A stretch of DNA of 64,000 bases from Octopus bimaculoides (lineage: Eukaryota): NCBI RefSeq assembly GCF_001194135.2, contig NC_068984.1, forward strand, positions 82,157,949-82,221,948, given 5' to 3'. The notes beneath the pieces were generated by a model that did not search any database, was not told where the DNA came from, and saw nothing but the letters and a program-made list of their open reading frames with translations. Below, piece after piece: positions 21,563 through 55,152 of the stretch. Positions within the stretch are counted from its first letter, which is position 1; every line of letters begins with the position of its first letter. Both the position numbers and the translations under genes were made by a program.

Positions 21563-21606
21563 TCAACTAACATAGCTTTTTGGAGCAATAATCAAACTGT
21601 CAGCAT
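21563..21606 (-). CDS. CULT gene final coding exon
   Basis: Acceptor tttttattgcag; 44 nt encoding (Y)ADSLIIAPKSYVS-TGA. An AATAAA lies at 21523-21518 on the minus strand; others occur further downstream. Confidence 0.88.
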
Positions 21607-24600
21607 CTGCAATAAAAACAGAAAATAATTAATAGTGTTTATGTCAGTCAGACATGTTACATTTCCTTCTCTCAGTAAATAGATTTACAAAGGGAAATTA
21701 AGAGTGAAAGCATTTTATTTAAAGAGGAATTTCTATACAGAAATATAAGCAAATGCTCCACTTGATATGTAATGTCAGTATATATGCACCACAAAGTGAA
21801 AATGTATTGAGATGAAATTGGACAAAGAGAGAAGACAGCACTGGTATGATAGAATGTGTGTGAGTGAGGACAGCTGAACAAAGAAATACTGATCACTAAA
21901 TATGGATGGAACTTTTGAAGGAGGGAGATCCAGGGAAGATGTAGGATGAAGTAGTGAAAACATACCTCAAGATATTGAGTCATGTGGAGGAGATGACAAA
22001 AGACTGAGGTGATTGGCAATTTGCTGTGCTCACTGATGACATGTAAAAAGCACCCTTGCTTGTGAAATGTAATGGGGTACCCATGCTAGTGACACATAAA
22101 AGACAAGCAATACATACACTAAGTAGGGTGGTTGGCATTAGGAAGGGCATCCAGCTGTAGAAACCAAGCCAGAATAGATGACTGGACCCTAGTGCAGCTC
22201 TCCAGCCTACCAGCTCAGGTCAAACTATCTAATTCATGCCAGTATGAAAAACAGACATTAAATGATAAGAAAACCTACTTATCTCAACAAACACTCTTCT
22301 GACTATGGCACTATTCTCTCAGCTATTGTAACTATATGAAAGTGGAACAGCACTATTTCATCCTCTTTCACACTATCAGTTATCCTTCTCCTTGGAACCT
22401 TTTGTCACCCATCCTGCATTCTCAACATCATCCCTTACCACTTTATTTTCCCCTGAACACCCTCTTATATCTGCCATCAATCCCTCCATCCCTGTTTATC
22501 AATCGCTATTTCCACCCATGTGTACCTCTGGTTTCAGTCTCTGTAATTGTAACTTTCATCCCCCACACTCTACATCATACAACTATTTCTCATTTATCTA
22601 TTGTGTTATTATACTGTTGCACTCCGACCCCAGCCTTTATTTCTATTGCCACTTATCACTTCCTATTTTCCTCCCAACTGTGATTGACTAATGACCACCT
22701 GTGTTCGCTTTTATCTCCATCTCTAACCATCTGTCATTCTCCTTTCACACTCTTGGAAACTTACCCACCCTTTTCTGATAGTCTGCTTCTATTCACTCTT
22801 CAATTCATTTTCTTGTACCTTGAAGGTAATGCTTTGACACCTCATCACCATCTTTTCTCTCTTTCTAGCTGGAGCAGCCATATATCTCCTCTACTGCAAG
22901 ACACCTGTTCCTACCCCTTTATCCCTATTTAGCCTCTCAACATCTTGCATAAAGCCACCTTCCTCAATACGACACTCCCACACAGTTGAGGGGCCTTGTC
23001 TTTCAAGTTACTTGGTGACCTCAATAGTGCTGGTGCCATAAAAAAAAGCACTCAGTATACTTTGTAAAGTGGTTAACATTAGGTAGAAGATTCAGCCACA
23101 GAAATCATTAAGCAAACCTACAATCAAAGGCATTCCAGCTGTGATCAACCCATCCTTTTAGGAATATGCAAGACTACATATTCAATATTCCATTTCCTTA
23201 TTTAAGATGGTTAGGTATGTTTTGAGGGTGATGTAGCTGCATGTCAAATAACCATGCAGAGACCCTCATAAGCTTGGTTTTCTTCATTGTAAAAACCATA
23301 GATAAACCATGGATATTAACACTGGATGTACAAAATATTTCTTTCTTTGAGTTGTAGAGATACAAGCATGACATGATGTGTCTTGGATGTTAAACCTGAC
23401 AGAACTTATCCCTTTCCAGGTCTGAGACAGCTGATTTCTTACAGAGAGAAAGAAATAGAGAAAAATCAACCCCAATACTGGACTGGTACTTTATTTATTA
23501 ACCCTGAAAGTTGATTTTTTGTATTTTTGTGGAGTGAGAGAACAGATAGCTGAAACAAATATTGTGAGTTATTGTTACCCTAATACAGAGTTTTATAATT
23601 AATGAAAATTTAAAATGCATTTTTAAAAATAATATATTTTATATATTTGTAAATGATGTAGAAAATTTAAAACAAAGTGATATATGAAAATATGAAATAA
23701 AGAACGTCATATGTAAACAAACTTAAGTCTGTTTTTGAAGCGCTGAAATGTATTGTAGTATAAGTAGAAAGATAGATTTTTCAGCCAGGTTGCTGACAGA
23801 TTTTTCTGCTCTGTAAGGGATATTATCCCATGTATACTGTTCTATCAGTATTTATGTGTTGAAAAATATATCTTTCTACTTGTACTATGAAATAAAGAGT
23901 ATTAGTTATATATCTTGGAAAGATACAATTGGTGAAAAACTACTAATAATTGTGACAAGAGTTGGTTTATTTGATTGACTTTAATATTTAATAGACGAAA
24001 TATTGGTTTCAAATTTTGGCACAAAGCCAGCAAGTTCAGGGGTTGGGGTATGTCAATTGCTTCAACCCCAGTGCTCAACTGATACTTATTTTATCGACCC
24101 TAAAAGGATGAAAGCCAAAGTTGACCTTGGTTGGAATTTGAACTCAGAACATAAAGACAGACGAAATGCTGGTAAGCATTTTGGCAGGCATACTAACAAT
24201 TCTGCCATCTCGCCATGTTTAATAGATGAAATATTGAAAGCTTTACTCACATTCCTGATGTACTAAATGACTAAGGATTAATCCATAGAATGACTTTTTC
24301 TCTCCTGTGTGATAATCTGAATCAAATGATTCAAAAAACCTGAAAACACAAGAAACAATATCAAGTGAGTAAATGAGTTAACAAGAGAAGCCTTTACATG
24401 GTGGCTTGACATGCTAGAAATTGCAGCCAACTCTCCCTTAAATCACACTCAACAATCTTAAATAAGTAAAGGATATGCTAGATAATATAGTACTAGAGCC
24501 AGATCAAGCAAAACTATTTGTTTTAAATTATATATCTGTGTTGACCTGGGCCAAACAACAATCAAGTGAATCTAATAATAATTCTGCTTGTTCCTCTGTT

Positions 24601-27600: not shown

Positions 27601-30600
27601 TTGTTTGTTTTTCACGTGCCACTGGCACATGTGCCGGTAAAGCGATGCTAGATTGTGAAAAATGGATTAGATAAGGTTACTGTGATTGATGACTAGTTTT
27701 ATCTGTTGTGGAATAACGTTTTGTGAGAATGTTATACTTTCATTAATCAATGATAGAGGGATAGTACCTATGGTCTTTGTTGGCCCTCCTCTTAAACTAA
27801 TGATATTAATGCTGTTTATAAATTTCTGTAGAGTGATAACTTTAGTAAAATGAATCAGTACAAAGAAAATTTCAGAGAATGGTAATTTTTAGGAAGAATT
27901 GGCAAAATATAAGCAGGGAGGATACTGAGTAAGGTGATGAGAAAAGAAGAGAGAAGTGCATTTGAGTGGAGATATGCAGATTTCTAGTTAAGGGATGCAG
28001 AAGCTGTGATAGTAGAAGAAACAAAGAGAAAACAGTACATCTGTAGTAGTTGTAATATATCTGAGTGATGATAAAGGTTTAGAAACAGACAAGCCTCAGG
28101 TAAAAGAACTGGACAGAGTATAATCTAAAATATGAAATAGCCTGACCAAAGAGAGATTTGTATGACGAGTATGTACATTGTAGCAGTAGAGGGAAAGTCT
28201 AGAAGAACAGAAGATGTAACTCGTTAGTGGAAGCAATTAACAATAGCAGAGTAAATAAGGTGGCAGTCTTTCTTCTACTTGCATCCCAACTTTTGATCCT
28301 AAGCTGTGCCTTGGATAAGATACTAAACATGCACTTACTTTATTTACCTGGCAACAAAAAAAGGCAAAAATAGAGAATGAGAAGAGCAGGGGAATGTGTG
28401 TGGCATACTGTGGAATGGAAATTGATTATGGAGAGGGTGGAATATGTATGTTTTTCTATAGTGCCATGATTAAATCTTTTCACCTGTAAAATAAATGAGT
28501 GGAGGCAGAAAGAATGAATGACGTATAAAGAGCTAAGAAAGAATTTTTAAAACTCGTATTGTCGTTGTTGTTGATAATGCTTAGCCCCATATTTTTAGCC
28601 CTGATTGAGCAGGCTTATGATCAAAAGCGTTTCAACTATGACAATCCCATTTTTTTGTATATCTAGAATTCCATGTTGCAATGTCTCCTTTCATTTTCAA
28701 AACTGTAGGGTGTAATTTGAGGAAGAGTTAGGTGTTGTTTCTTGCATGTTGAGCGACCAGAAAGAGGACTTATTAGTTCATTGCTGTTATTAACTTATAA
28801 ATAGTTGAGAACTAAAATACTCATTATCAATGAATATTTTGCTTTAACAATCATAACTAAGGGTGTGTGGCAGAAAAATCTTCTGCTAATGGTAAAATTC
28901 ATTGCATTCTTAATGCTTTAACTGTCAGTGAAGACTTCTGATAACCATCAAATATCCATAAGAAATGAAGAGAAATGTTGAACTCACCATCCCATATGTA
29001 CCCCACAGGTTGGACAGATTACAATTGACCAACTAAAGCCAGGAAACCAGGTGTCTTCTTTATGTGGCTGTTAGAATAGAATGATATTGGATAGGTTATT
29101 TTCAAAGTTTCAGTTTAAAAAGAGAGAACAATTGGGAGAGAGACAAAATACTAAAACACATGCATGACCATAGACATACACACACAAACACAGATCCACT
29201 GACAATCACACATACAGCTACATAGATGCAAATATATCAGTCACAGGCATACATATACACAGTGGTACAATCACACATACAAACATGTATGTATGGATAC
29301 ACACACACACACAAATGCACATCTACATATCTGTACTCAAATATATTAGTGTGGGGAAACATAACTAGAAGGTTGATAAAATGTTTTCCGGCAAACATTA
29401 TATTGCCAATTATGGATGTAAAGAACGTTTTTAAAAACATCTAAAAAATACATTACTGTACTTAGTTACTCAGTAACACCATGTGCATGAGAAACAATAG
29501 CTTGTGTTCACATACTTGATGTTCACTACATTAGCAATGACAAGACTATTGTTTTCATGTAGATAGCATATCTGACTAATTAATTTATTTTTCTTTTGGT
29601 AATGGATCTTATTAGATACGCTAATTTTTCATGTCTATAATTGAAACATGTTTCTTTTACATCTACTTAGCAATTCTCTCAGCACTATTTTGGCAAATAG
29701 TGTGAAATCTATGTGAAGACTGAAAAGGTCTAATAAGACTAAGACCTGTCTGTCTTTTATTGTCTACTATACTAACCAAAACCATTAAAATAATAGTCAC
29801 TGAGTTAATACTGACTTTTCATCACCATTGTAAGTATTGGATCATCACATAAATAATGCGGTTTTTTTCAATTGCATGAACTAAAAGTCAGAGAGGGACG
29901 GAATAAACTACCTGCATCAACTTGCTATAAAAGCAGGTAGTAATTTTACCTTGACTTATTCTTAGTGCAAGTTTTGAGGAGTGCAGTTTGATTTTAACAG
30001 TTATTTTTTTTAAACTATAATGGAAGTGAAAAAGGAGCATATTCGACATATTTTGTAATATGAGTTCAATAAAGGCAACAATGCAATGGAAAGTGCGAGG
30101 AATATTAATGCAGTATATAGGGATTGGACATTAAGCATAAGTCAGTGTCAACGGTGGTTCCAGAAGTTCCAAGCTGGGAACTACAGCCTAGAAGACAAGC
30201 CTCATCTTGGAAGATCTGTAGAGCTCAACGATTATGTCCTACAAACCCTAATGGAACAAACTCCCATTGTAACTGTTGAGGAACTAGTAGAGAAGCTTGG
30301 ATTTGGTCATTCAACCAGTCATTCAAGTCAGTGCAAGAAGAAAAACGACCATCATTGGTTTCTAGACAAAAGGTGTTCTTTCATCAGGATAGTGCTCGGT
30401 CACATACAATGAAGATGATATTCCAAAGGCTGGAGCAGTTTAAATGGAAAACAATGCCTCGCCCACCATATTCGCTGAACATTGCCCCATCTGATTATGA
30501 TTTATTCCGCAGTCTTCAAAATCATTTGGAAGGAAAAAATATGGATTCTGTAGATGAGGTCAGAAGAGTACTGGGGAAGTATTTTTCATCATAGACAAGT

Positions 30601-33600
30601 GAATTTTGGAAGAGGGGCCTTGCAAGTTTACCAGATAGATGGAAGAGCATTGTAGAAAATGGAGGAGAGTATAATTTAGATTAAAAAAGAACTTTGTTTA
30701 TCAAAATTTTGAAAAATAAAAGAAGTATAAAAAAATCTGTATTATTTATGGGATGACCCAATATTTCTAATTGTATTATTGAAACTCAGTCACTGAATCT
30801 GTTAATACTAACTTAACTGTAAATGATACTGCTGATTCAAAATATTCAACATCAGAGACTAAAATTTTATCTGTTAAATCTCCACTTGATTTAATTGTAA
30901 ATAAATATTATATTGAATATATGGCAGAGTAGATTCATTAAGCTGAGTCATCCTTCTTGTCATCACAATGATTATTATTGTGGTCATGGTTGTTGTTGTT
31001 TCAACTAGGGTCTGCCTTTTCCCACTAGACCTAAGATCAAAAACATTCCAGTTATGGCTGTTTAGCTTCATTATACCATTGACCCCATAGGTTGAAAGAA
31101 ATTGCTTCTTTTTGATATCGTCAACACTTCACACAAGAGTTTTGCGTTGTATTAGCCAGGCATTGGCTTCTTCCAAGTTAAGGTTCAAACATTGTCCAGT
31201 GTTCATCCTCATCCCCAACTGTTATATAAGACTTTCAGAAAAACTTTAAAGAGACTTATTAAGGTAGATTATATAGGTTTCAAATCAAGAGGATTTGTGT
31301 CATATAGTTTATAGACAGTTCTGTGCTTGTTTACAGGTAACACCTTCCTTCGTTAGCTGCATGTCAGTCCCTTCTCCTTCTGGATCTCTGTGCATAACCA
31401 CAAGACTTAATTGGGAGTTTGATATTCATTGGATAACATTAAGAATGCATAACTCAAATTTAATACGTGGCACAACATTAATATGACAAATAATAAAGAA
31501 CAATTTACAGATACAAATCAGTAATTTAAGGCAATCATCACAGTGGTCACATTGTCTTTTTCTTTCCTACCCCATGCAGTATAATGTACTCAAGATTACA
31601 ATCTTCAATGATGTTCCTTTTTTAAGAAAGTAGCAAGAGATTTGGCTGTTATTTCTAACAGATTGAGGGACTATGTAGCAGCTTCCTTTCAACTCTACTT
31701 TCAGTATCAACTCTCCTCCCATTGGTAAATGTTCCATTGTTATTCTTAAACTTGCTTTAAAATAATAACCACAACACATACACACACAGAAGCAGCAGCT
31801 TTACAGACCTTAGATGGTATGGTTACATTCTGAAACTGCCTTATTCTCAATATTAGCCATATAGAAATTTGCATGTATAGGTCAGAAGAGAGAACTCAAA
31901 GCTCCTCTGTTCTTGTAAGTATAAAGATTGCCTGTGAGCAATGAAAGGTAACAACAGTCATGTAAGCCAACAGTAGATTTCTTAGTATGTTTCTTGGCAT
32001 ACATACAACATCACTAAACAATTACGCACAATCAACCAATAAAGTACATCAAAAAGACATAACCTATGTTTTACAATTTTTAGAAACTTTACTAAAAACT
32101 GATAAAGTTGGCAACATTTCCACTATGGTTATAAAAAGATTCGTTATCAATGTCCTAATAAAAGAGATAATAAAATTATATAACATAATGTGCACAAACA
32201 TCAAGCAATAGAAACACCTAATATGCTAATGTAACCATATCAGCTGTACCGCGTGTGCATGTGTGTGTGTCATGTGTACTCTAGTTTTAGTAGAAAGAGC
32301 ATTCATATCCCATAGGCAATATTGACATTTTTCTGATTTATATATTTAATATATGTAATACCATATTTTGATACTCCATTGACCTCAGATCTCTGCAAGT
32401 AGGTTACTGGTATATATAATCTTAGCTACTTAGGTTAGCCTTCAAATCTGAATGGTCACAGTTGTGAAGTCACTCTGTTGTAGTGGTTAGCACAGTTATT
32501 CAGTTTATAGAAGAGTGACATGAATCTCATAGGTGATGTTACAACTTTTCTCTAACTTATATATATTTGTGTGTGTGTGTGTGTGTGTGTTCTTGTGCAT
32601 ACAGGTATATTATATATATATGCATGTGTATCATATATATACAGGCATACCTCACCCTACATCGTTAATTGGTTCCAGGAGACACAACTTAGGTAAAAAA
32701 AAGACATAAGTTGTCTCTAGTCTAGGCTAGGCCAAATTTACTTGTCTCTAGGCTAAATCGATAATAACCATTCCCATTCTGTACCTTATTTATGAATGCA
32801 TTTTCAATAATACATGGTTAATAAAAATCTATTTTAAGCTTACAAACAAATAATTTTTATTTTTTAATACAGTAAAAAAGAAAGTAATCTAAATTTATGA
32901 ATACAATTTGGTGATGTTTACCATTCATCACAGACACTTTATTTATGAATGTGGTTTACAATAAGGCATGGTAAAAAAGCTTAAAAAACAAATTTTTATT
33001 ATTTTGAAATAGTAAAAAAAACTAAATTATTTAAAATTTACCAATACATACATAAAATTTGGTGGTTTACATCGTGGATGTAGATGGCTGTGGATCATCA
33101 ACATCAACAGCTGATTCTGGCTGTTCTTGTTCAATGCGCTTAAAAAACTGGTTGAGAGTTCTTGAAACTGTCATTTTCTCTTTCTCAAGGATTACATTAT
33201 AAGGAGCAAAAACTTTGTGACAAGCCCCCATAATCTTGGAAAAGCGTTGAGCATTTGAATCCATATCCTCGAACATAGAAAGATTTTTTTTGATATATGC
33301 AAATGCTTGCTGCATTTTCTTAATAGTAAAGTGACATGGCTCATGTTTGACTTCCTCTTTTTCTTTATTTTGCTGCTCGTGAAGCTCTATCAAATCCTCA
33401 TTCATCAGGAGCTGTTTATCTTTTTCAAATAAATCTGTGAAATACCCCTCCTCCAAATCCTTTTCCAGTTCTTTGCTTTTAGTCACCAACGTTTTGTTGA
33501 TGGCAACATCATCAAATCCCTTAAAATCATTCACAAATTGCAGGCATCGCTTCTTCCATACACCATTCATAGCCATGCCGCTGCTATGTTCTGTACAGCC

Positions 33601-34524: not shown

Positions 34525-34555
<31 letters not shown>

Positions 34556-35256: not shown

Positions 35257-35289
<33 letters not shown>

Positions 35290-35308
35290 TTATGTATGTA
35301 TGTATGTA

Positions 35309-35365
<57 letters not shown>

Positions 35366-38300
35366 TTTTGAATATATGTGTGAATGTGTATAGAATAATA
35401 TATCAGTTGAATAAAGTTAAAACATGGTCTGGTTTTTATGTTTTTTATTATGGTATATTATGGTATTTTAACATTAAAAAAATATTTTGTAATGCTCATA
35501 AAGTCAAATTAGCGCTTTCATACATAGTGTAATCATCAAATTTCAAATGTATATATATATACATACACTAGTAGAATAAAATGTGAATTAGTTTAAGTTT
35601 TTTTTTATTATAACATCATAAATTATGTAATCTTTATGCTTGCTTTACTAGCAAATACGAGTATGTTATGAGGTAATCATTATATAGGCATTGAAACACC
35701 AGATCTTCAGAAGAAAATAGTTATTCATTATTATTTAACATCATCAATTGATTGGGAGACAGACCAGCATCCTATCCAGGAGGGGAACCTATACACCAAT
35801 GAAACCGGGAAACCAGCCCTTATGAGTCAGGCATGGCTCAAGAAGGAACAAACAACAACAACAATTGATTGACAGTGCTAGGTAGAACTGTTTACAAACA
35901 TAAGAGAACAATCATTTTATAACTGTTAAGAATAAGAAAGTTATTTATTTTATCAGTAAAATAAAGAGAGAAAGAAAGAAAAGGAATACTGTAGTCATGA
36001 TGTTCAAGGAAGAAGGGAAGGTCAACTCCCTAAGATGTCATAGATCAAAGGAAATTCTAAGTTAACAATGATAAATGGTTTAGATGGCATTAGTGATGAC
36101 AGCAGTTAGGAACTTGGATATTGAAAAGCAGGCAAAAGTACCTACATATTCAAGCTCACACAAACTGATATACATAGATATACAGCTGTTCCTCGCAACT
36201 TTTTATGTCCTCTCTCATATAGCACAAATCATCATCACACCCAGTGTAGGCAAAGCAAAATCTATAAATATGTTCAATAGAATATTATAGCAAAGAAACA
36301 AAATTGTTAACACACTGGTAATTTAATACACATGCACATTAGATACTGCCATCACTGCATCTATAAAACAAGAAGAAATTTATAAGGGATACTGATATTT
36401 AAAAAGACTTGAAGTGTTAATATTTGAGGCACAAATTTTATAACTAAAAATACTTAAATTCAAAGTACAGAGCTGACATCCAGCTTATCCTCATGGGAGA
36501 GTGGAGAATACACTCCTAACATGATAACTACTACATGCAACATAAAATGAAAAATATGGAAGCAAAAAAAGTAAGTTAATAATAATTGATGAAAAAAATA
36601 TCTATCTAATCCTTTTAGCATTCAGAGTACCTAAATCAAATAATTATAAAAATGCTTTTGTTCAAACAAGTCATATTTTAAATCAAACCTTTAGTACTGT
36701 GAGTGCTGAAGTATTAGAAGAGAAATTTTTGGAGTAGCAAAGTAAAACTTACCTTATCAGCTTTTAAAACTTCTGCTTTTGAAAATGTTATCACTTCAAA
36801 GTATTTTCCTTAACAGAAAAGTCATAAAAGAGAATGAAAAAAAAAAAAGGTAACATGTAAAAAAACCAATTGCTTAAATTGTTAAAAAACCTAAAATGGC
36901 AGAAATTGTTTAAATAGTTCCATAACTTCTACATATTTTGTGTAAAAACAGTACAGAGTACAAGTTCTAAAATTATTCTTATTGTTTATATGATCATTCC
37001 CTGTTTAGTCAAATGTTGTTGTTTTTTATCCAGCCTCATACCCATTATGATTGAATTGAAGAGTTAAAGAATTTCCTACCATGCCAATTCAGGTTTTTTT
37101 CTTTCTTTTAGTTGGCTGTGTGGTGAAGAAGCTCGCTTTGCAACCATGTGGCTTTGGGTTCAGGTCAACATAATTGTTTCGTTAATCCAGTAACAACAAT
37201 ACAAAGTATGTAGCCCTTAAAATGGTTTTTGTGCATTTATTGAGAATACCGAACTGTCTTACACAGGATCTTGTTTTTAGGAATTCCCAATAAATTATGA
37301 ATACCCAAACTGTGAAGTCAGTTATGTAATAACATGAAATTAATTACCCAATAGTTACCTGGCTGGAGAGAGAGATCCGGAATGAAGACAGAGACAAGTG
37401 CGCTACTGCAAAACAAATACATGGTTACCCAACCTGAGGTAAGTGCAGGAGGAGAGAGAGAGAGTGGGAGACAACAGGATAGAGATGGTGGCAAAATGCC
37501 AGGCATACTCATAAGGAACAGGGACCAGAATATAAATGGGATGATTGAATAAAGGAACAGAGAGATATAGATGGTGGAAAAAAGACAATATGAATGCCTT
37601 TAATCATAGGTTTGCATGATCATAACTTTCTTTTTGTTAATGACTTAGAGGAAGAACAATGGCTACAGCCCCTTTTAGGGTCCCAAAGACTGGTGGCAAA
37701 AAAGGAACTTATCTTAAGACTAGAAACCTAGCTCAAATGTTTACAACAGAGTAGACTGTTGGAGATACACAAGAACTAGGTGGAGGCATTAAACTGAACA
37801 AGATAAAATCTACCATCCAACAGGAATGGCCCTCTTTAACAGGTTCTCACAGCTTCTATCTATTAAATTTTACTCACAAGGTATTGAGTCAACTCGAGGC
37901 TATCTGAATACCTTATCCAACTGACTATTAAATGACCTACAATGTTCAAAATAAAATTTACAAATGCATCTCTCATTGTAAAATCTCACCAGTGCAAACA
38001 TAATGGATGCAGAGTGTCCAACTGAAATAATCTTAAGGGACCATAGTTAATTCGATACTGACCTGCTATTGCAGCTGATATAATTGATTTGTGTTTTTAC
38101 TACTGTTGATATTATTGCATTTTCAAATTTCCCAAACCACATTACTTATCTTCTCAGACAACAGAAGCCATCACTATTAATCTTTGCAATACTGCTGGTA
38201 ATGTAAAGGTTACATCTTTCTACTAGAATTGAACATTTTCAGCAAAATAAAACTGGATGGAAAATGATGAAAATTGATCTTTATTTTAAATACCGAACCA

Positions 38301-39266: not shown

Positions 39267-39323
<57 letters not shown>

Positions 39324-48300: not shown

Positions 48301-51300
48301 GTAGTGGTTAGAAACAATTCATGAATCAGGAATCTGGGCTTTCCAAAGTACTATCATCTCTGCATATATCAAATTGTCCAGCGACTGCTTAATTGAGGCC
48401 ACTGCCACCCACCACATTTGTATATAATGCAATGCTATGATACTTAATGTTAACAAACTGATTAGAATTCCATTAGTTTTATGCTATCTATCCTTAGCAG
48501 CAAATGTGTTTCACCTCTAACCCATCTGAGACACTTAAACAGGTTGCTGAACTCATCCTTTTAATCATGTCACTTCATATCACATATGCAATCAGCCCTT
48601 ATAAATCCAGACCACAAATGGATTCACATACAGCTACACTGTAACAGTGCAGATAAAGAATACAGCCTTCAATAACTTGAGAAATTCCCCCACTTCTACC
48701 AACATTGTTCTTTTTCTGACTACCAGTACTCCTACATGTCACATGCCAAAGTGAGGGACCCTTATGTGTTTTACTTGACCTGCTAGAAATAATTACTAAA
48801 TCTCCTGCAAATCACATCCTACCACATTATAAGAGACAGGTGACGTAGTCATGCATACACTATGCTTTAAACAGAAACAGAATGATTATGATTGGAATGC
48901 CCTTGATCATAGCTCTTCTCACTAAGGGCTGACTTATGGCTAAACTAACATCTAAAAAGCAAGCAATACCTTCTTGCAATGTACAGCTAGCAAGCTCTGT
49001 TTCCTCAGTTAAAAATGCACTGTAAGTAGTACTTCTTGGGGAGAAAGCTTCCACACATTCAACAAAATACTTCCATAATTTCCACCTCACCATCACATAC
49101 ACATAGACACAATAAATAAAAACTCTTACAATCATTGAACTATGTGGTCCTGAGTTTCCTACACAGAAAAAAAATGAGATGGTCATGGCTGGAATACTTT
49201 TGATCATAGATTTGCTCAATCAGAGCTGAGCAAGGATTTCGCAACAATAGCAATCCCTTCAGAACAACAAAGTCACCAGTCTAGCAATATTTCTCAAGTA
49301 TACTCCTGAGTTAGCAGCTATCCTTACTAAAATCTTCATTCTTTTTCTACAGGGATATATCTTGATCTTTGGAAGCATACTACTGATGAAAAGCAACTTC
49401 TGTAACTTGCTATCAACCAGTCATACTCACTTTCTGCATCTCAAGTGTATCATGGAATAAAATGTTTTTGGTTTATTTTCCATTTTATTAAATTAAGATT
49501 GGTTAAATAAAACAATAAGTAAAAGTAATACCTAAAAGGGCTTGTCAGTCTGCCTCATGGTCCCAGCGAACAAAATGGAAAAAGACATTCCTCAGAGAAT
49601 GGTGGATAGCCATTGCTGCCTCAAAAGCAGTGAGCAGGGATGTGGTCTGGGGGCTGAGGATGCTGGAGGTCTCCACTGCTACAGGCTTGACCACAAATCT
49701 GTCAGAGAGCAGCTAGAATTTGTGGCATCTGGGGTGGTCTTTGAGTTTGCTGCCCCCTTTCCTCACAAAAAATATAAACTATAAATAAAGTGCAACTCAA
49801 AAAAATGCCACCCCACCCCCTTTCAGTGTTCTAGCAGTTCTCCAAAAAAAAAATTGTTGCATCTGACATCAAAGCTATTGTTCATGTCTAGTATAAGAAT
49901 GTTCAAGCTAAGCCATCCACTTATGGGCTTTATTTGCCTCTCGACTCTTGGATTAGAAGCTTTCAGACAAATTGCACCATCACAGTGCATACTGTCAGGA
50001 CTCTGTCTGGTTCACACTATCAACTCTAGTGTGTCTGAAAGTTTGATTATGTCCCCCATTATTCTTACTGTACATTATTAACCTGCTTGTAGTTATCTCT
50101 AATAATGCTCACTGCTATAAAGAGAATACAAGTCTTCACAGTCATTGTTTCATGCTAAAGAAAGAATTTTATTCCTCATCCACTCCAGATGAAGGTACAT
50201 AGCGCAGTGGTTGAGCTCATGATTATCAAGTCATGGCTTTGATTCTCAGATCATATTTCTCAACTCCAATCAGCTGAAAATTAATATCACCAACAGCATG
50301 GGACAGGTTGGGGTTAACCTTGCCATGGACTAGCATCCTATTCAGTGAGGAGTCTTATACAACCAGTCACTGAGGTGAGAATTGGGATAAGCTTCAACCT
50401 AATGGACTTGTAGCCTCAAGACAGAAAAAGGAGGATCCTCTCTAAACTTGGACAACATGAATCTAAGACCATGAAATACCATACAAAAGATTTCTAATTC
50501 TCAAAACAGATAGCAGGCCTGATAAAAGTAAATCTATTGATCATAATCACAAGCACATCATTCAACAAGAATTGTCAAGTGACCACTATCATCATCAGAG
50601 AGACCCGTAACTCTGTTTTTTGTGGGGTACTGAAAAACTAGTTTTCATATAATTCTTGGGATGATTGAACCAGAGTGGTTTCCAGGTCTCCGAGCTATGA
50701 ACAGAACGTAGTGCTACTGACAATGCATGAACTTTTCAGCTGGTTATCTGCTAACTTATCCACTCAGCTATCTGTAGTCTCCCAATCAGTGTTATAGCAG
50801 TGGCAACTCTTAGTGCTAAAGCCAAACTATGAAAGATTATATTAAAATCTTATTTGTTATATGCTGTAATTTACATATCTTTCGTTAGAGTCCACATTTT
50901 CTAACATAAAAAATCAGGTTTTCTATCAGCAGCAACTTTGTTTCATGATATTTTTAGAAATTAAAATCTATAAATTTTAACTTTTTTTTTTTATAGGAGT
51001 AACATTATCAGAACATTAAAATAATCTATAGACTACTGACTGAGAAGTCATTCTTTCTAAATAAGGCTATCAGAAACATATTTCAACAAATGATTGATAT
51101 GAGCATCAGATTGATTTGTGTAAAGTCTGTAATAAGGTACAACAATATCATTTTAGTCATTTGTTATCTCAACTAATCTGTGATTGTCCCCCTCTTACAT
51201 AACATTTAACTAAAAGAATTGTTACCTTCAGGATTTTGGAAGAGCTGAACAATTGTTTTATCTTTGCTTTGAATTGTATCATTTCTCTGTCGAAGGGCTA

Positions 51301-53420
51301 AGCTACTTGGTATATGAACCAGATCATCAATGCAAGCTACTTCATGACCACATTGGCGACATATCAGATGTGAAGCTACAAGAAGAAAAAAAAACAAAAA
51401 TAGTTTTAAAATTCTTTTGAAACTATTTTATGCAGATTTTTTTTTGATATGATACAGATATAATAAATATTTGTAGAATCCAATGTACCATTTAAGTGAA
51501 GATATTACAGGAGAAAGCATTATTCAGACATATACTTTGGATGATCAAATTTTACCTGATATGAAAGAGAACCTGCTTGAGGTAAATAGCTAAATTCATT
51601 TAAAATTTCACGAAATTTTTCTATTTAATTTTTCGTTTTGATGACCAATTGTAAAGTCAAGAGCAATGAAGACAGTAACAACATAAAACACTGGATTAAG
51701 TCCTTTTTTTGTTTTATTCCCTGAATGAAGTTCAATAGTATAAGTATCACAAATATTTTTTTTTAATTTTTATTTATTTATTTATTTATTTAATAAAATA
51801 AACTGTTCTGCAAAAATTGATTTTGGGTCAAAGCAAGAAACCAGTATTAACTAACATAGGAATCTCTATGCAGTCAATCAGGTTGCTAGAAATAGCAGCC
51901 AAATCTTCCTCCAATTACACCTTTGCTATCTTAAGAAACAAAGGATAAATAGGATATTATAGTCCTAGGGAAATTATGTCTGAAGGAAAGACAGTATGGT
52001 TATGGTTACAACACTTTACTGAGAGGTCTGCTTAACTGGGGATGTCTTGGCACTATCAGTAACAAAAATAACATAAAAAAAACACAAAAATAAACCTGCA
52101 GTGGTGAGTACTATAGAAGAGGAAATCCCTTGGTGTGTCACATTGGAAACAATTTTAATTCCTGGTTATGTAATTTGGCTCCACTTTACACATCCCACTT
52201 CTATCTAATCTAAAAGTAATGCATATAGTGCCTTTGTCTACTGAAAAGAAACTCATATTGACAATAAAGTTGGATGAGAAAAATTGTTAACCCTCAAAAT
52301 TGACCATATTTTAAAATTTTCCCTGGAGATGAGGTTAAAATCAGTCTTAACCCTAGTTACTTTAATACCTTATTTTTTTACATTAGTAGCTTTATTTTGA
52401 TGTCTGAAGGAGGAAACAAAAATAAGAGGAAAAGACACCTGGAATGTGATAAGTTTCATGTATAACTTCCTTAAGGTTTTAAATCCAATGCTATATCAAC
52501 CAGTGCTTTATCATATCAGCAAAGAGAGGGGGCGAGAGGGAAAGAGAGGGGAAAAGATAGAGAAAAAAGTGGAGAGATTATAGTATATACCTTTTGATGA
52601 AAACTTAATTAAAATATGACTTCAATACTTATAATGCTAAATATTTATGCTTTCACTTACCCCTCAAATTTGAGTGTAAACGATACTATTAGATTCAAGG
52701 TAATATTAAGTTAAGATTTTTGTCCCTTAATTTGTATTGATTGAGTTACATGTTGCTCCCTAATACTCAGTTCAGCATCACTACTGAGTTTTCATGTGAA
52801 CTATTAGAATTAACAGCTAATATATTTACCCAGTAAACTAATTCTCTTCAGTCTAGTACTCATAGACTTTTTAGATAGATGTTTCGAAGTTTAATGTCTG
52901 ACTGATCACAGTAGTCATTCACCAATGTCATGTTCCATTAACAGACACAATTTTGGCAAACAGAATTTCATAGTTGTCAAAACAATTCTTTTACAGATTA
53001 AAGATTTTTGTATCAATACTCCTATTATTTCTTAATTAGATGTCAATATATAATAGGACTGCGTCTACAAGGAAATTAGCATTGAAATTCTCAATTCAAA
53101 GTCTGTCAGAATTGACACAAGGAATAAGATGGGTGATCAGTTGTTTCAAATTCTTAGATTATGAGCAAGAATTAAGATGTTTGATAATAGGTATATTTGA
53201 AGTATATATAAAAAAAATGCAAAAAGTAAAAATAATTCTTGATAAAATCAACAAATTACACAATGTGTATTAAATACATTCACAATTCAAAATGTTCATC
53301 GAAAATACTCAAATATATATAATAAACATGTAAACATATAAACACATACATATGCACACATACATACATATATAAACATATACACACATACATATATACA
53401 CACTTATACATAGAAAAAAG

Positions 53421-53464
<44 letters not shown>

Positions 53465-53857
53465 ATATATGTATGTATACAATAATGCCAGATTAAGGCC
53501 AACCTATGCCCCAAGCACAGCCCAACAGTATAGTTCCCCCACGACCCTTCAATTTTCAGAAGGGTGCTGAATGTGAAATAATGGATTAATAATTCAGTTT
53601 TCTCCAACGCAAGACCTCCCCACTATAACTATATTAAAAATAGCTGTTAGCTATGTAAGCAAATTATTTATTCGTAACTAGGACAGCAGGAAAAAGATAT
53701 AATAAAAATTTGCAGCGTTTTATTCATTAAGAAAAATTTATAATTGTGGTCAATTAGGCACTGGGGAAAATAACTGGTGTCCCTTTCTATTTGCGCCCTT
53801 TGCACATGCATTTTTTCCTTTTTCCTTAATGTTTATTCGGCCCCAACGATGAAGTGC

Positions 53858-53918
<61 letters not shown>

Positions 53919-54834
53919 TAGTTGATGAAGTGCATGTATATATATATATGCCTAGTTGATGAAGTGCATATATATATATATATATACCTAGTTCTGTAAA
54001 TCATGCATGTTATATATATATATATATATAACACGAAAGATTTACAGAACTAGGTCTTCTTCCTTTATACTTTAGAATTCATATGACAAAATTCTAAATT
54101 GAAGACAACAGGACTAGTCTTGTGGGAGTTATTTTAATAAAAGATTATATCCACTTTATGTACATTGAGTACTTCGGGTTAGATTGTATCTTCTCGTTTT
54201 CTTTGTTTTTAAGTGCGAACATATATATATATGTATACACACACAACATATGTATGTGAAAGTAACTGCTACGAAAGAATTAAAAAAACGAAACAAGAAT
54301 AAAAAAAAACTGAATAAATTAAAGCCGGTGAGAAGCCGATTTATATATATAAACACGAATACGGAAATAGTAAAAGGGAAGAGCTACTCTTAAAAATATA
54401 TAATGTCCCGACAGTAATGGAAAACTTAGATTACTGGAAGAGTTGAGCGAAACAAAAAATATATGAAGGTTCATTCGAAATTTGTTGAAATTACTAAATA
54501 GATTTGTGCTCAAAGAATTTATTATTTTTTTTCGTAAGTAGTTTAAAGAAGAAATGTTGTTCGTTCTTAATGCTTACATGAGGTACTTAACAGGCGTACG
54601 TCAAAAGATGCATATTTTATTGATTGTTAGAGTAATTATGAATACTTTCTTGAAAAAAAAAAAAACTTCGTTAAGTATAAGTAAGTATAATTGTTAGTGT
54701 GTACAATAAAGATAAACACCTTCAGCCAATATTAGACGGCGAGCATTAAAATTTGTTACAAAAACAACCATAAAAAGACTTATATTATACATAGTACACG
54801 TTTACAAAAACGACGTGCATCACTGAAATCACCA

Positions 54835-54868
<34 letters not shown>

Positions 54869-55152
54869 GACATATGAGGTATAGAATTTTGGAAATAGGT
54901 TCAAGAAATTATTCTAAATATGTAGTATCATGTCTGATAGTGTTAAACACGGGGCAGCCGCTTAGGAAAGTTCCAAAACTGTCAAACGAGGAACTGGCTA
55001 GAGGTTTTTTTTTATTTACCTTGCAAACCATCTGATAACACACTAATAAAGCTGGAAACAAGATACAAAATTGACAGGGAATAGGCGAACGCCACGGGTG
55101 AATGTGCCGAAGTTTCTATAGAAAAATCAGGACTTCCTAATAGCACCACCAT
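21563..55152 (-). CDS. Six-exon gene for a stand-alone CULT-domain (cereblon C-terminal/thalidomide-binding-like) protein with an N-terminal signal peptide or anchor, 183 aa
   Basis: Exons 55152-55020, 51375-51226, 36808-36753, 29067-28988, 24339-24251 and 21606-21563 splice in frame (133+150+56+80+89+44=552 nt) through GT..AG introns. Product: MVVLLGSPDFSIETSAHSPVAFAYSLSILYLVSSFISVLSDGLQASHLICRQCGHEVACIDDLVHIPSSLALRQRNDTIQSKDKTIVQLFQNPEGKYFEVITFSKAEVLKADKPHKEDTWFPGFSWSIVICPTCGVHMGWFFESFDSDYHTGEKKSFYGLILSHLVHQEYADSLIIAPKSYVS*. CULT motifs present: CxxC, NPxG, TWFPGFxW, CxxCGxHxGW, FYGL. No LON domain, so not canonical CRBN. Confidence 0.92.
24003..24216 (-). mobile_element. SINE family A copy ~35 bp from the donor of CULT exon 5
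   Basis: ttatcgaccctaaaaggatgaaagccaaagttgacc...gaatttgaactcagaac...ctgccatctcgcc. Confidence 0.8.
24251..24339 (-). CDS. CULT gene coding exon 5
   Basis: Acceptor ttgtgttttcag; 89 nt encoding (W)FFESFDSDYHTGEKKSFYGLILSHLVHQE; donor GAAT|GTGAGT; phase 2-1. Confidence 0.9.
25495..25660 (-). promoter_or_regulatory. Core-promoter-like layout (CCAAT, TATA, Inr) nested in CULT intron 4
   Basis: Minus strand: CCAAT 25597-25593, CTATAAATAG 25527-25518, TCAGTT initiator with A at 25499 about 27 nt downstream; a further CCAAT on plus at 25654-25658; CpG-rich surroundings. Activity is inferred only. Confidence 0.5.
25757..26306. repeat. Degenerate AT-rich tandem array (units like TTAATTAGTTGCTTGC)
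   Basis: Many variants of ttaattagtt(aatt)gcttgc; the first ~50 bp are in the inverted orientation. Confidence 0.9.
28988..29067 (-). CDS. CULT gene coding exon 4 (WFPG..W..CxxC..HMGW)
   Basis: Acceptor ctattctaacag; 80 nt encoding PHKEDTWFPGFSWSIVICPTCGVHMG(W); donor ATG|GTGAGT; phase 0-2. Confidence 0.93.
29837..30761 (+). mobile_element. Internally deleted mariner element (925 bp)
   Basis: ~30-bp TIRs (ttggatcatcacataaataatgcgg / ttgggtcatcccataaataatacag) with TA on both sides; HTH region (SISQCQRWFQKFQAG..SLEDKPHLGR) joined almost directly to FFHQDSAR..H and PPYSLNIAPSDY, so the first catalytic Asp region is missing. Confidence 0.92.
32642..34749 (-). mobile_element. Tigger/pogo DNA transposon (decayed) interrupted by an RTE-tail repeat
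   Basis: TIRs CAGGCATACCTC / CAGGCATACTTC with TA duplications; fragments FKASQGWFMRFK, EQIFNVDKIGLYWK, LQPLDQGIIA on the minus strand; (GAT)n-tailed insert at ~34403-34555. Confidence 0.9.
36753..36808 (-). CDS. CULT gene coding exon 3
   Basis: Acceptor ttttctgttaag; 56 nt encoding (G)KYFEVITFSKAEVLKADK; donor AAG|GTAAGT; phase 1-0. Confidence 0.9.
41582..41930. mobile_element. Mariner-type MITE with ~106-bp inverted arms, TA TSD
   Basis: tgatcaataagtatccagactg...gcactaa mirrored by ttagtgc...cagtctgaatacttattgatca; TA at 41580-81 and 41931-32; no ORF. Confidence 0.85.
41935..42757 (+). mobile_element. Internally deleted Tc1/mariner-superfamily element (possibly DD37D/maT-like), 823 bp
   Basis: 26-bp TIRs cagagtgcgaggggtatttgacgaca / cagggtgcgaggggtatttgaagaca with TA flanks; N-terminal HTH ORF (IIDENPRRSMRSIAKELQVSDWTIR) then a large deletion. 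Subfamily is a guess. Confidence 0.85.
43490..43940 (+). repeat. Dispersed repeat family C (..gggagatttggctgctatttctagcaggtcgagcgaccac..), two copies here
   Basis: The same motif recurs near 1-40, 6880-6930, 21160, 23200, 24415, 28720, 31640, 48780, 51880 and 62460 in both orientations; class not identified. Confidence 0.65.
43641..43782. mobile_element. piggyBac-like MITE, 142 bp
   Basis: ATAA|CCCTTTAGCA ... TGCTAAAGGG|TTAA; perfect 10-bp TIR. Confidence 0.65.
44185..45600 (+). mobile_element. RTE-clade LINE 3' half with 3' UTR and (GAT)n tail
   Basis: HQG.VLSPLLFII, ELLYADDLAL, VDNFCYLGD, RIRIGWKKFRELL; multiple stops; ends in ...cccatgccagcagggaaaactgacaccaaatgatgatgat. Confidence 0.88.
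45655..46612 (+). mobile_element. CR1/L2-like LINE 3' fragment
   Basis: LKYVDDVKLY, KCITMHLG, HISKIVKKA, LYMAMVQPHLEFAS, KHFFTLRVAEAWNKLP; short ATT-rich tail. Confidence 0.85.
48700..49460 (+). mobile_element. Highly decayed CR1/L2/Jockey-type LINE fragment
   Basis: Remnant TPELAAILTKIF...TGIYLDLWK...PVILTFCI resembles the RT N-terminal ELAPIL..LF...GIFPD.WK...RPISLT motif; boundaries approximate. Confidence 0.5.
51226..51375 (-). CDS. CULT gene coding exon 2 (first CxxC, NPEG)
   Basis: Acceptor ttttcttcttgtag; 150 nt encoding (A)SHLICRQCGHEVA...RNDT...LFQNPE; donor GAAG|GTAACA; phase 1-1. Confidence 0.93.
53826..54055. repeat. Three units of gatgaagtgcat-(TA)n-cctagtt followed by a 17-bp perfect inverted repeat around a (TA)n run
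   Basis: acctagttctgtaaatc (53986-54002) / gatttacagaactaggt (54039-54055). Confidence 0.9.
55020..55152 (-). CDS. CULT gene coding exon 1 (hydrophobic N-terminal segment)
   Basis: ATG in gcaagATGG context at 55152; encodes MVVLLG...VAFAYSLSILYLVSSFISVLSDGLQ; donor CAAG|GTAAAT at 55020/55019, phase 1, matching exon 2. An in-frame upstream ATG at 55215 is an alternative start. Confidence 0.8.

What the first reader, a model, noticed from the sequence alone, without database searches (positions are those of the whole stretch)
21563..55152. Secretory-pathway cereblon-like (CULT) protein with an intact thalidomide/cyclic-imide cage, spread over 33.6 kb
Seen in sequence: six small exons, four of them not represented as such in the ORF track, splice into a 183-aa protein with a hydrophobic stretch (residues ~20-40), an N-glycosylation sequon (RNDT), both CxxC zinc pairs, and residues aligning to human CRBN N351/P352 (QNPE), W380 and W386 (TWFPGFSW), W400 and F402 (GWFF). 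The H378 position is Asp. There is no LON/DDB1-binding region. Established: CRBN's cage binds thalidomide, uridine and C-terminal cyclic-imide degrons, and a secreted animal CULT subfamily has been noted without a known function. Inference: this protein cannot be a CRL4 substrate receptor and may sense or scavenge imide-damaged proteins or nucleosides in the ER lumen or extracellular space.
Basis: partly seen in the sequence, partly recalled or inferred. Interest (0 to 1): 0.75.

Follow-up and report, generated by a model that had tools for sequence, protein, structure and literature searches.

The report
Octopus secreted-type cereblon-like (CULT) gene
This is a real, conserved six-exon octopus gene for a small cereblon-like ligand-binding protein that has a secretory-type N-terminus and no ubiquitin-ligase part; the protein is already in public databases and its family was described in 2015, so it is an ordinary member of a family whose function is still unknown.

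Summary
Six minus-strand exons (55152-55020, 51375-51226, 36808-36753, 29067-28988, 24339-24251, 21606-21563) join through canonical AG/GT sites into a 552-nt CDS of 183 aa. The protein has both CxxC pairs, the NDT sequon, QNPE, TWFPGFSW and GWFF.

It is identical to XP_014788483.1 / UniProt A0A0L8FMN4 ("CULT domain-containing protein", Octopus bimaculoides). The Argonauta hians orthologue has the same six exons and phases. Ka/Ks is 0.11 overall and 0.06 in the CULT part, and only the exons are conserved in DNA.

Sequence and predicted fold (pLDDT 87, TM 0.85) match the thalidomide-binding CULT domain of cereblon and bacterial MsCI4. No LON domain was found, and a divergent neighbouring gene starts 4.2 kb upstream.

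The protein belongs to the "secreted eukaryotic CULT" group of Lupas et al. 2015: about 150-210 aa, cnidarians to teleosts. In 60 members the four Cys, W126 and W140 and the N-x-S/T sequon are invariant, W120 is kept in 59; the H378 position varies.

Secretion, glycosylation and ligand are inferred, not shown. The octopus N-terminus is an atypical signal and may be an uncleaved anchor. The imide- or nucleoside-sensing idea is plausible but untested. This is already known as a sequence and a family, and interest is low to moderate.

The parts
55020..55152 (-). Exon 1 (133 nt). The ATG is at 55152 in a strong Kozak context (A at -3, G at +4). It encodes residues 1-44 plus the first base of codon 45. 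The hydrophobic segment (residues 20-40) is at 55095-55033. The donor is CAAG|gtaaat.
   Evidence: AF2 predicts a helix at residues 19-40. DNA is conserved with Argonauta at 76% over 55152-55006, and about 80 nt of upstream sequence is also conserved. An in-frame stop lies 31 codons upstream.
51226..51375 (-). Exon 2 (150 nt), residues 45-94. It holds the first zinc pair CRQC (51361-51350), the invariant RQRNDT hairpin motif with the N-x-T sequon (51292-51275), and QNPE (N92/P93 = CRBN N351/P352).
   Evidence: The Argonauta exon has the same length and is 79% identical in DNA.
36753..36808 (-). Exon 3 (56 nt), residues 95-113, GKYFEVITFSKAEVLKADK. This corresponds to beta-strands after the NPxG turn (CRBN GYVHETLTVYKACNLNLIG).
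   Evidence: It was the only candidate among 877 phase-compatible AG...GT intervals that resembled CRBN. The Argonauta exon is also 56 nt and 79% identical. F98, E99 and T102 are nearly invariant in the family.
28988..29067 (-). Exon 4 (80 nt), residues 114-140 (the first two bases of W140). It holds EDTWFPGFSW (W120 = W380, W126 = W386, D118 = H378) at 29058-29029, and the second zinc pair CPTC at 29016-29005.
   Evidence: tblastn with human CRBN gave E = 1e-8. The Argonauta exon is 80 nt.
24251..24339 (-). Exon 5 (89 nt). It completes W140 (= W400) and encodes F142 (= F402) and FFESFDSDYHTGEKKSFYGLILSHLVHQE.
   Evidence: It is the only AG|GTTYTTY site in the interval. The Argonauta exon is 89 nt and 82.5% identical.
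21563..21606 (-). Exon 6 (44 nt). It encodes the C-terminal tail (Y)ADSLIIAPKSYVS plus TGA (stop ends at 21563). The tail motif YADSL..PK.Y.S is specific to this subfamily.
   Evidence: The tail is conserved from cnidarians to teleosts: A171 52/60, L174 50/60, P178 55/60, K179 50/60. The Argonauta exon is 44 nt.

Best explanation
The locus is the Octopus bimaculoides orthologue of the animal 'secreted CULT' family, a paralogue of cereblon and not cereblon itself. It is already catalogued as XP_014788483.1 / A0A0L8FMN4.

Shown:
- It is a six-exon gene under strong purifying selection.
- It encodes a 183-aa protein made of an N-terminal hydrophobic helix followed by one complete CULT (beta-tent) domain.
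- The domain carries four invariant zinc-site cysteines and the aromatic cage W120/W126/W140/F142, which in cereblon and MsCI4 binds glutarimide, succinimide, uracil-type rings and C-terminal cyclic imides.
- There is no LON or DDB1-binding region.

Inferred:
- The hydrophobic segment inserts the protein co-translationally into the ER with the CULT domain on the luminal or extracellular side. It is then either cleaved off as a signal peptide or, in octopods, retained as a type II anchor.
- N76 in the invariant RQRNDT hairpin is N-glycosylated.
- The cage binds a small, widespread cyclic imide-, lactam- or uracil-like group, either free or at a protein C-terminus.
- The protein therefore acts as a stand-alone binding module (receptor, carrier or scavenger) with no link to ubiquitination.

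My confidence is about 0.95 for identity and architecture, about 0.7 for luminal or extracellular topology, and about 0.4-0.5 for an imide- or uracil-class ligand.
For: Gene model:
- Canonical junctions give 552 nt and 183 aa.
- Argonauta hians has the same six exons and phases.
- Ka/Ks is 0.11 overall, 0.06 for residues 46-183 and 0.45 for the N-terminus.
- Between the two genera, collinear DNA conservation is confined to the six exons, apart from one 99-bp block in intron 1 and a short repeat.

CULT identity:
- phmmer against PDB finds only cereblon and MsCI4, at E = 6.5e-12 to 1e-9.
- The family profile scores cereblon at 9e-18, against YPEL5 at 0.23.
- The AF2 model has pLDDT 87.3, with the CULT core mostly above 90.
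- The Foldseek top hits are MsCI4 and the CRBN thalidomide-binding domain, TM 0.79-0.86.

Family:
- 222 relatives were found and the best 120 listed. They are about 105-220 aa apart from one 318-aa model, run from cnidarians to teleosts, and include the si:ch211-51h9.7 orthologues.
- In the exhaustive search, most of the best 150 representatives are 95-260 aa.
- This matches group II of Lupas et al. 2015: CULT only, an N-terminal secretion signal, and a sand-fly homologue that the paper reports in saliva (PMC4287342).

Conservation in 60 members:
- C50, C53, C131, C134, N76, Q88, N92, W126, W140 and F157 are invariant.
- W120 is present in 59/60.
- Position 142 is F in 50 and Y in 10.
- The sequon N-x-S/T is kept in 60/60, including four T-to-S swaps.

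Topology: in 54/60 members the N-flank is more positive than the C-flank of the hydrophobic segment, and in 50/60 the C-flank is net negative.

No LON:
- tblastn with human CRBN hits only exon 4.
- A divergent DUF4772 gene starts at 59313.
Against: - No experiment or transcript data was available here, and no signal-peptide predictor.
- The O. bimaculoides n-region (residues 1-19) has no Lys or Arg and a net charge of -2. The uncharged span is about 27 residues, long for a cleaved signal peptide.
- A Cys4 zinc site is unusual in the oxidising secretory pathway.
- The position matching CRBN H378, which hydrogen-bonds the glutarimide, is Asp here. It varies across the family: F 19, H 16, D 15.
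- The inserted beta-hairpin is about 14-16 residues longer than in CRBN or MsCI4 and carries its own invariant motif, so ligand specificity may differ.
- No paper in the searchable library reports a ligand or function for this subfamily.
Confidence: 0.85

Rival explanations
1. The N-terminal segment is an uncleaved signal anchor. The octopod protein would then be a type II membrane protein with its CULT domain tethered in the ER or Golgi lumen or on the cell surface, not a soluble secreted protein.
For: The uncharged hydrophobic span is about 27 residues in Octopus and 28 in Argonauta, against a family median of 19. AF2 predicts a 22-residue helix at 19-40. The n-region before the hydrophobic core is long.
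Against: Plausible -3/-1 cleavage sites follow the hydrophobic core, at VLS|D and LQA|S (read directly from the sequence). Many relatives have short, classical signal peptides, for example Ptychodera, Pocillopora and Porites. Lupas et al. describe the group as secreted and cite a salivary homologue.
Confidence: 0.3
2. The CULT domain faces the cytosol. The hydrophobic segment would insert N-out/C-in (a type III anchor) or not insert at all, giving a membrane-tethered or free cytosolic zinc protein.
For: In O. bimaculoides the N-flank has net charge -2 and the C-flank 0, which is the reverse of the positive-inside pattern. Cys4 zinc sites are typical of the cytosol (general knowledge).
Against: 54 of 60 relatives, including the Argonauta orthologue (+2 versus 0), show the opposite and canonical charge bias. 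The N-x-S/T sequon is kept in 60/60 members, with T-to-S swaps that preserve it, which is hard to explain without luminal exposure.
Confidence: 0.07
3. It is the true octopus cereblon orthologue with a mis-called 5' end, and LON-domain exons lie further upstream.
For: NCBI's automatic name is 'protein cereblon isoform X1'.
Against: The window has no LON similarity. An in-frame stop lies 31 codons upstream of the ATG. A divergently transcribed DUF4772 gene starts 4.2 kb upstream. Nearly all listed relatives are short (about 105-220 aa) and start with a hydrophobic segment. Bit scores to family members are 130-324, against 42-49 to cereblon chains. I did not check whether a separate canonical CRBN exists in Octopus.
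Confidence: 0.02
4. The cage binds something other than a cyclic imide or uracil. The long invariant hairpin (RQRNDT...QLF) and the subfamily-specific C-terminal tail would then define a different, conserved extracellular ligand or protein partner.
For: R75, N76, D77, T78, Q88, L89 and F90 are invariant or nearly so and are absent from CRBN and MsCI4. The hairpin is about 14-16 residues longer. CRBN H357 is replaced by Phe in 59/60 members, and the H378 position is variable. Lupas et al. also considered other cage ligands, such as methyl-ammonium groups and amino-acid side chains.
Against: The three Trp, the F/Y at the pocket floor and the N-P turn are all retained. Bacterial MsCI4 has Phe at the H378 position and still binds thalidomide and uridine (PDB titles; alignment).
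Confidence: 0.35
5. It is a pseudogene or a chance assembly of short ORFs.
For: The exons are tiny (44-150 nt) and are scattered over 33.6 kb of transposon-rich sequence.
Against: Ka/Ks in the CULT part is 0.06, with saturated synonymous divergence (Ks about 1.5). The exon structure is identical in Argonauta. Collinear DNA conservation is otherwise confined to the exons. The model has high confidence.
Confidence: 0.01

Closest known systems
Secreted eukaryotic CULT proteins (group II of Lupas, Zhu & Korycinski 2015, PMC4287342), for example the zebrafish si:ch211-51h9.7 orthologue group
   Same: The architecture is the same: an N-terminal hydrophobic or signal segment plus a single CULT domain, about 150-210 aa. 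The family is restricted to animals. Identity to members from cnidarians to teleosts is 41-77%. The cysteines and tryptophans are invariant, and the RQRNDT hairpin and the YADSL..PK.Y.S tail are shared.
   Different: Nothing differs in kind. The octopod N-terminus is longer, lacks positive charge in Octopus and has an unusually long uncharged span. The gene is stretched to 33.6 kb by transposon-filled introns.
Cereblon (CRBN), substrate receptor of CRL4
   Same: The C-terminal CULT/thalidomide-binding domain is shared. It includes the two CxxC zinc pairs, the NPxG turn, W380/W386/W400/F402 and E377. The predicted fold matches with TM about 0.85 to isolated CRBN thalidomide-binding-domain chains.
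   Different: There is no LON domain or DDB1-binding helical bundle. It has an N-terminal hydrophobic segment instead. H378 is Asp, H353 is Glu and H357 is Phe. The 'sensor' hairpin is about 14 residues longer and carries a glycosylation sequon. The C-terminal tail is different. Identity in the CULT region is only about 25-30%.
MsCI4 / MGR_0879, the single-domain bacterial CULT protein of Magnetospirillum gryphiswaldense
   Same: It is a stand-alone CULT domain without ligase-docking parts and is the best PDB sequence and fold match (E = 6.5e-12; TM 0.85; about 30% identity). Its H378-equivalent is also not His (it is Phe), yet it binds thalidomide, uridine and glutarimides (PDB entries listed).
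   Different: It is bacterial and, as far as I recall, cytosolic with no signal segment; I did not check this here. It lacks the sequon, the long hairpin and the conserved C-terminal tail.
Yippee / Mis18 (Pfam PF03226)
   Same: They share the beta-tent fold with two CxxC pairs. It is the only Pfam family to give a hit.
   Different: The hit is below Pfam's gathering score, 22 against 26.6 bits. With the family profile, YPEL5 scores E = 0.23 against 9e-18 for cereblon. To my knowledge yippee proteins lack the tri-Trp cage; I did not check this here.

Membership tests
CULT domain (PROSITE/UniProt 'CULT'; Lupas 2015) | Significant sequence similarity to the thalidomide-binding domains of cereblon and MsCI4 | tested here: met
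   With the single sequence, phmmer against PDB gives E = 6.5e-12 (MsCI4) and 1e-11 (chicken CRBN), and all 46 significant hits are cereblon. The family profile gives 9.4e-18.
CULT domain (PROSITE/UniProt 'CULT'; Lupas 2015) | Two CxxC motifs forming the zinc site at the apex of the beta-tent | tested here: met
   C50/C53 and C131/C134 are present and invariant in 60/60 relatives. Zinc binding itself was not testable.
CULT domain (PROSITE/UniProt 'CULT'; Lupas 2015) | Three conserved tryptophans forming the aromatic cage | tested here: met
   W120, W126 and W140 align to CRBN W380, W386 and W400. They are present in 59/60, 60/60 and 60/60 family members.
CULT domain (PROSITE/UniProt 'CULT'; Lupas 2015) | Beta-tent fold | tested here: met
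   The AF2 model has pLDDT 87.3. The Foldseek top 50 are all MsCI4 or CRBN, with target TM 0.79-0.86 against isolated domains.
CULT domain (PROSITE/UniProt 'CULT'; Lupas 2015) | Binding of thalidomide, uridine or cyclic imides in the cage | not testable with these tools
   This needs recombinant protein and binding assays.
Secreted eukaryotic CULT subfamily (Lupas 2015, group II) | The protein consists of the CULT domain only, with no LON domain | tested here: met
   The protein is 183 aa. There is no LON similarity anywhere in the window. The upstream neighbour gene starts at 59313 on the other strand.
Secreted eukaryotic CULT subfamily (Lupas 2015, group II) | N-terminal secretion signal sequence | tested here: inconclusive
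   A hydrophobic segment at 20-40 is present, and the family shows the positive-inside pattern in 54/60 members. However, the Octopus n-region is uncharged or acidic and the span is long. No SignalP or DeepTMHMM was available.
Secreted eukaryotic CULT subfamily (Lupas 2015, group II) | The closest relatives are the short animal CULT proteins, not cereblon | tested here: met
   The best hits are almost all about 105-220 aa animal proteins at 41-77% identity and 130-324 bits, including the teleost si:ch211-51h9.7 orthologues. Cereblon chains score 42-49 bits.
Secreted eukaryotic CULT subfamily (Lupas 2015, group II) | Actual secretion or luminal location | not testable with these tools
   There is only indirect support: the sequon N76-x-S/T is kept in 60/60 members.
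Cereblon proper (CRL4 substrate receptor) | N-terminal LON-like domain and DDB1-binding helical bundle preceding the CULT domain | tested here: not met
   Only 45 residues precede the CULT domain, and they form a hydrophobic helix.
Yippee/Mis18 (PF03226) | Score at or above Pfam's gathering threshold | tested here: not met
   The score is 22.0 bits against a cutoff of 26.6. YPEL5 scores E = 0.23 with the family profile.

The most novel reading that the evidence does not exclude
The secreted CULT family, including this octopus protein, could be a luminal or extracellular reader of spontaneously formed C-terminal cyclic imides (aspartimide or glutarimide) or of uridine-like metabolites. That would be a ubiquitin-independent, outside-the-cytosol counterpart of cereblon's damage-degron recognition. 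In octopods it might work as a membrane-tethered (type II) receptor. The invariant glycosylated RQRNDT hairpin would then provide a second, family-specific recognition surface.
Probability: 0.2. Interest if true: 0.65.

Novelty: already known. Interest (0 to 1): 0.25.

Why it matters
For this window it matters little. The gene model, its CULT annotation and the existence of a secreted animal CULT subfamily are all already public (XP_014788483.1 / A0A0L8FMN4; PMC4287342).

The wider point is that the subfamily still has no reported ligand or function. It runs from cnidarians to fishes, is reported by Lupas et al. not to occur beyond fishes, and is under strong purifying selection. I found no functional study in the searchable literature.

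Since 2022, cereblon's cage has been recognised as a reader of C-terminal cyclic imides. A cage-intact paralogue located outside the cytosol is therefore a direct way to ask whether such damage marks, or uridine-like metabolites, are also read in the secretory pathway or extracellular space.

The family-level observations made here give concrete mutational targets for that question:
- the 60/60 sequon
- the invariant long hairpin
- the conserved C-terminal tail
- the variable H378 position

Tried and rejected
Exons 3 and 5 had to be found by a phase-aware AG/GT enumeration and a motif search.
- The Pfam scan gave only a sub-threshold Yippee-Mis18 hit plus noise from zinc-ribbon families. This Pfam copy returned no CULT-specific family.
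I did not repeat it with masked stops. The LON test therefore rests on tblastn, the in-frame stop, the neighbouring gene and the family architecture.
- I looked in Hostomska et al. 2009 (PMC2714351) for the sand-fly salivary CULT homologue cited by Lupas but could not tell which protein it is. That evidence is cited second-hand.
- Literature searches for the zebrafish gene symbol, for 'CULT domain' with 'signal peptide', and for 'CULT domain' alone found no functional study of the secreted subfamily.
- tRNA and Rfam scans of the window found nothing.
- ORFs at 39.8, 42.0 and 44.8-46.4 kb that looked transposon-like gave no Pfam hit.
- The top hit of the exhaustive search, P0126 (1737 aa, 22 matched stretches), is a cereblon-like model with an artefactual tandem repeat, not a multi-CULT protein.
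- I considered and rejected the pseudogene reading, the truncated-CRBN reading and membership of the yippee family; see the rival explanations and membership tests.

Full report
**Source and setting.** The window is eukaryotic: about 35% GC, rich in microsatellites, with four assembly gaps. An exact-protein look-up places it on Octopus bimaculoides chromosome CM046604.1 (GCA_001194135.2), at about 82.17-82.22 Mb.

**Checking the observation.** A motif scan of all six frames found RNDT and QNPE at 51.2 kb and TWFPGFSW at 29.0 kb, all on the minus strand. I then rebuilt the gene.
- Exon 1 runs from the ATG at 55152 to a CAAG|gtaaat donor at 55020.
- Exon 2 is 51375-51226.
- Exon 4 is 29067-28988.
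- Exon 6 is 21606-21563 and ends in TGA.
- Exon 5, at 24339-24251, is the only AG|GTTYTTY site in its interval.
- Exon 3, at 36808-36753 (GKYFEVITFSKAEVLKADK), was found by listing all 877 phase-compatible AG...GT intervals between exons 2 and 4. It ranked among the five best by splice-signal score and was the only one resembling cereblon's GYVHETLTVYKACNLNLIG.

The six exons add up to 552 nt and 183 aa, with canonical splice signals at every junction. The hydrophobic stretch at 20-40, both CxxC pairs, the sequon and the cage motifs are all present. The HMMER alignment to chicken cereblon confirms the residue equivalences to N351/P352, H378 (Asp here), W380, W386, W400 and F402.

**Independent support for the model.** The 183-aa sequence is identical to XP_014788483.1. 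NCBI names it "protein cereblon isoform X1" and UniProt (A0A0L8FMN4) calls it "CULT domain-containing protein". The gene range on record is 33,590 bp, the same as 21563-55152.

I mapped the Argonauta hians orthologue (77% identical) onto its own locus with an exact spliced aligner. It has six exons of 136, 150, 56, 80, 89 and 44 nt, with the same phases and quite different intron lengths.

Nei-Gojobori Ka/Ks between the two coding sequences is 0.11 overall. It is 0.06 for residues 46-183, where synonymous sites are saturated, and 0.45 for the N-terminal 45 residues, as expected for a targeting segment.

In a blastn comparison of the whole gene with the Argonauta locus, the collinear matches are the six exons at 76-82.5% identity, one 99-bp block in intron 1, and a short repeat matched twice. 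About 80 nt upstream of the ATG is also conserved. The gene is real and constrained. The pseudogene and chance-ORF readings are excluded.

**What the protein is.**
- Pfam gives only a sub-threshold Yippee-Mis18 hit, 22 against 26.6 bits.
- Against PDB sequences, every significant hit is cereblon or its bacterial homologue MsCI4, at E = 6.5e-12 to about 1e-9.
- A 60-sequence family profile raises this to 9e-18, while YPEL5 stays at E = 0.23.
- An AlphaFold2 model built on that alignment has mean pLDDT 87.3, with the CULT core mostly above 90. It predicts a helix at residues 19-40 followed by the beta-tent strands.
- The best 50 Foldseek matches in the PDB are all MsCI4 or CRBN thalidomide-binding domains. 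TM scores normalised to the target are 0.79-0.86 for isolated domains, at 24-31% identity.

**No ligase part.** Only 45 residues precede the first CxxC. An in-frame stop lies 31 codons upstream of the ATG. A divergently transcribed gene, whose first exon (59313-59921, plus strand) is a DUF4772 domain (E = 4e-26), starts 4.2 kb upstream. I did not check whether Octopus also has a canonical LON-containing cereblon elsewhere.

**Family.** A profile search returned 222 relatives, of which the best 120 were listed. Apart from one 318-aa gene model they are 104-220 aa. They come from these animal groups:
- cnidarians
- molluscs
- annelids
- nemerteans
- brachiopods
- chelicerates
- echinoderms
- hemichordates
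- amphioxus
- many teleosts, named after the zebrafish gene si:ch211-51h9.7

The exhaustive representative search found 180 clusters at E <= 1e-10, and most of the best 150 are 95-260 aa. This matches group II of Lupas, Zhu and Korycinski 2015. [quoted passage not shown] I could not identify that sand-fly protein in the cited paper.

**Conservation in 60 full-length members**.
- C50, C53, C131, C134, N76, Q88, N92, W126, W140 and F157 are invariant.
- W120 is present in 59/60 and P93 in 59/60.
- Position 142 is Phe in 50 and Tyr in 10.
- The H378-equivalent varies (F 19, H 16, D 15, Y 4, M 3, E 1). MsCI4 has Phe at this position and still binds thalidomide and uridine.
- The RNDT "sequon" is part of a nearly invariant hairpin motif, A-x-R-Q-R-N-D-T.
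- The N-x-S/T pattern is kept in 60/60 members, including four Thr-to-Ser changes. This is the strongest indirect evidence I found for luminal exposure and glycosylation.
- The inserted beta-hairpin between the first CxxC and NPxG is about 14-16 residues longer than in CRBN or MsCI4.
- A C-terminal tail, YADSL..PK.Y.S, is conserved across phyla. It also validates the tiny exon 6.

**Targeting segment.** Members with a complete N-terminus have a hydrophobic segment before the CULT domain. In 54 of 60 the N-flank is more positive than the C-flank, and in 50 of 60 the C-flank is net negative. This is the pattern for N-in/C-out insertion, which would put the CULT domain in the lumen or outside the cell.

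O. bimaculoides is one of only two exceptions. Its N-flank is -2 and its C-flank 0, and residues 1-19 contain no Lys or Arg. Its uncharged span of about 27 residues is long for a cleaved signal peptide, although -3/-1-compatible sites (VLS|D, LQA|S) follow the core. Argonauta has the canonical bias (+2 against 0).

I therefore rate luminal or extracellular topology as likely (about 0.7) and leave open whether the segment is cleaved or retained as a type II anchor. No signal-peptide predictor was available.

**Mechanism.** What is shown is a stand-alone CULT module with an intact aromatic cage and no docking site for DDB1. From that I infer that it is a binding protein and not a ligase adaptor.

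The long invariant hairpin, the Phe at the H357 position and the variable H378 position leave real room for a different or extended specificity. That is listed as a rival at about 0.35. Whether the four cysteines hold zinc or form disulfides in an oxidising compartment is also open.

**Comparison with what is known, and novelty.** The protein is a member of the CULT domain family and of its secreted animal subgroup. It is not cereblon proper, because the LON/DDB1 feature was tested and not met. It is not a yippee/Mis18 protein. Sequence, annotation and family are all already public, so the finding is "already known".

It is reasonable, but it is untested and not specific to this locus. The literature searches found no functional study of the subfamily, so the family remains an open and experimentally tractable question. 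That is the reason for a non-zero interest score.

**Why the gene spans 33.6 kb.** The introns are 3.6, 14.4, 7.7, 4.6 and 2.6 kb. Introns 2 and 3 carry decayed transposons:
- a Mos1-type HTH_48 fragment at 30086-30412
- pogo/Tigger DDE_1 fragments at 33567-33791 (minus strand) and 40666-40914 (plus strand)
- an HTH_Tnp_Tc5 fragment at 40211-40414

Noticed in passing
window 59313-59921 (+), continuing beyond 64000: This is the first coding exon of a divergently transcribed neighbour gene. The ORF is 202 aa and matches Pfam DUF4772 (E = 4e-26). The full 598-aa product on record also hits ZNF704_C. The 4.2-kb interval to the CULT gene's ATG may be a shared bidirectional promoter region.
   Followed up: partly
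window ~44421 downwards (minus strand), inside intron 2: A cryptic acceptor, ttacag|AT, opens the reading DSTMRARSSAYSSSHGLPVLNF..., which is the C-terminal tail of the O. sinensis 'isoform X4' model (P0004, 135 aa). That isoform splices exon 2 to this exon and ends before the Trp cage, so it is probably non-functional or splicing noise. The acceptor is intact in O. bimaculoides.
   Followed up: partly
window 30086-30412 (+), 33567-33791 (-), 40211-40414 (+), 40666-40914 (+); also 11514-12119 (-): These are decayed transposon fragments inside introns 2 and 3: Mos1 HTH_48, two pogo/Tigger DDE_1 copies and an HTH_Tnp_Tc5. A reverse-transcriptase (RVT_1) fragment lies downstream of the gene. They account for the gene's 33.6-kb span.
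   Followed up: partly
window 54766-54864, intron 1: This 99-bp block is 74% identical to the corresponding position in Argonauta intron 1 (L002 3338-3426). It is the only collinear non-exonic conservation in the gene. It lies next to a (TA)n microsatellite and has no open reading frame. It may be a regulatory element or just a low-complexity match.
   Followed up: partly
window 55160-55137 (minus strand): An out-of-frame upstream ATG lies 8 nt before the main start and opens a 7-codon uORF (MARWWCY*) that overlaps the main ATG. It is absent in Argonauta.
   Followed up: no
window 8849-8860, 10034-10359, 12822-13155, 17682-17699: These are runs of N (assembly gaps) flanked by TA/CA microsatellites, all outside the gene.
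   Followed up: yes
exon 1, window 55152-55096 (residues 1-19): The Octopus n-region has no Lys or Arg and a net charge of -2. This makes O. bimaculoides one of only 2 of 60 family members that break the positive-inside pattern. Argonauta and cuttlefish keep positive charges.
   Followed up: partly
database proteins P0126, P0151, P0132 (not in the window): P0126 (1737 aa) and P0151 (1022 aa) are cereblon-like models with artefactual tandem repeats of part of the CULT domain. P0132 (476 aa) seems to carry two CULT domains in tandem after a coiled-coil-like region.
   Followed up: no
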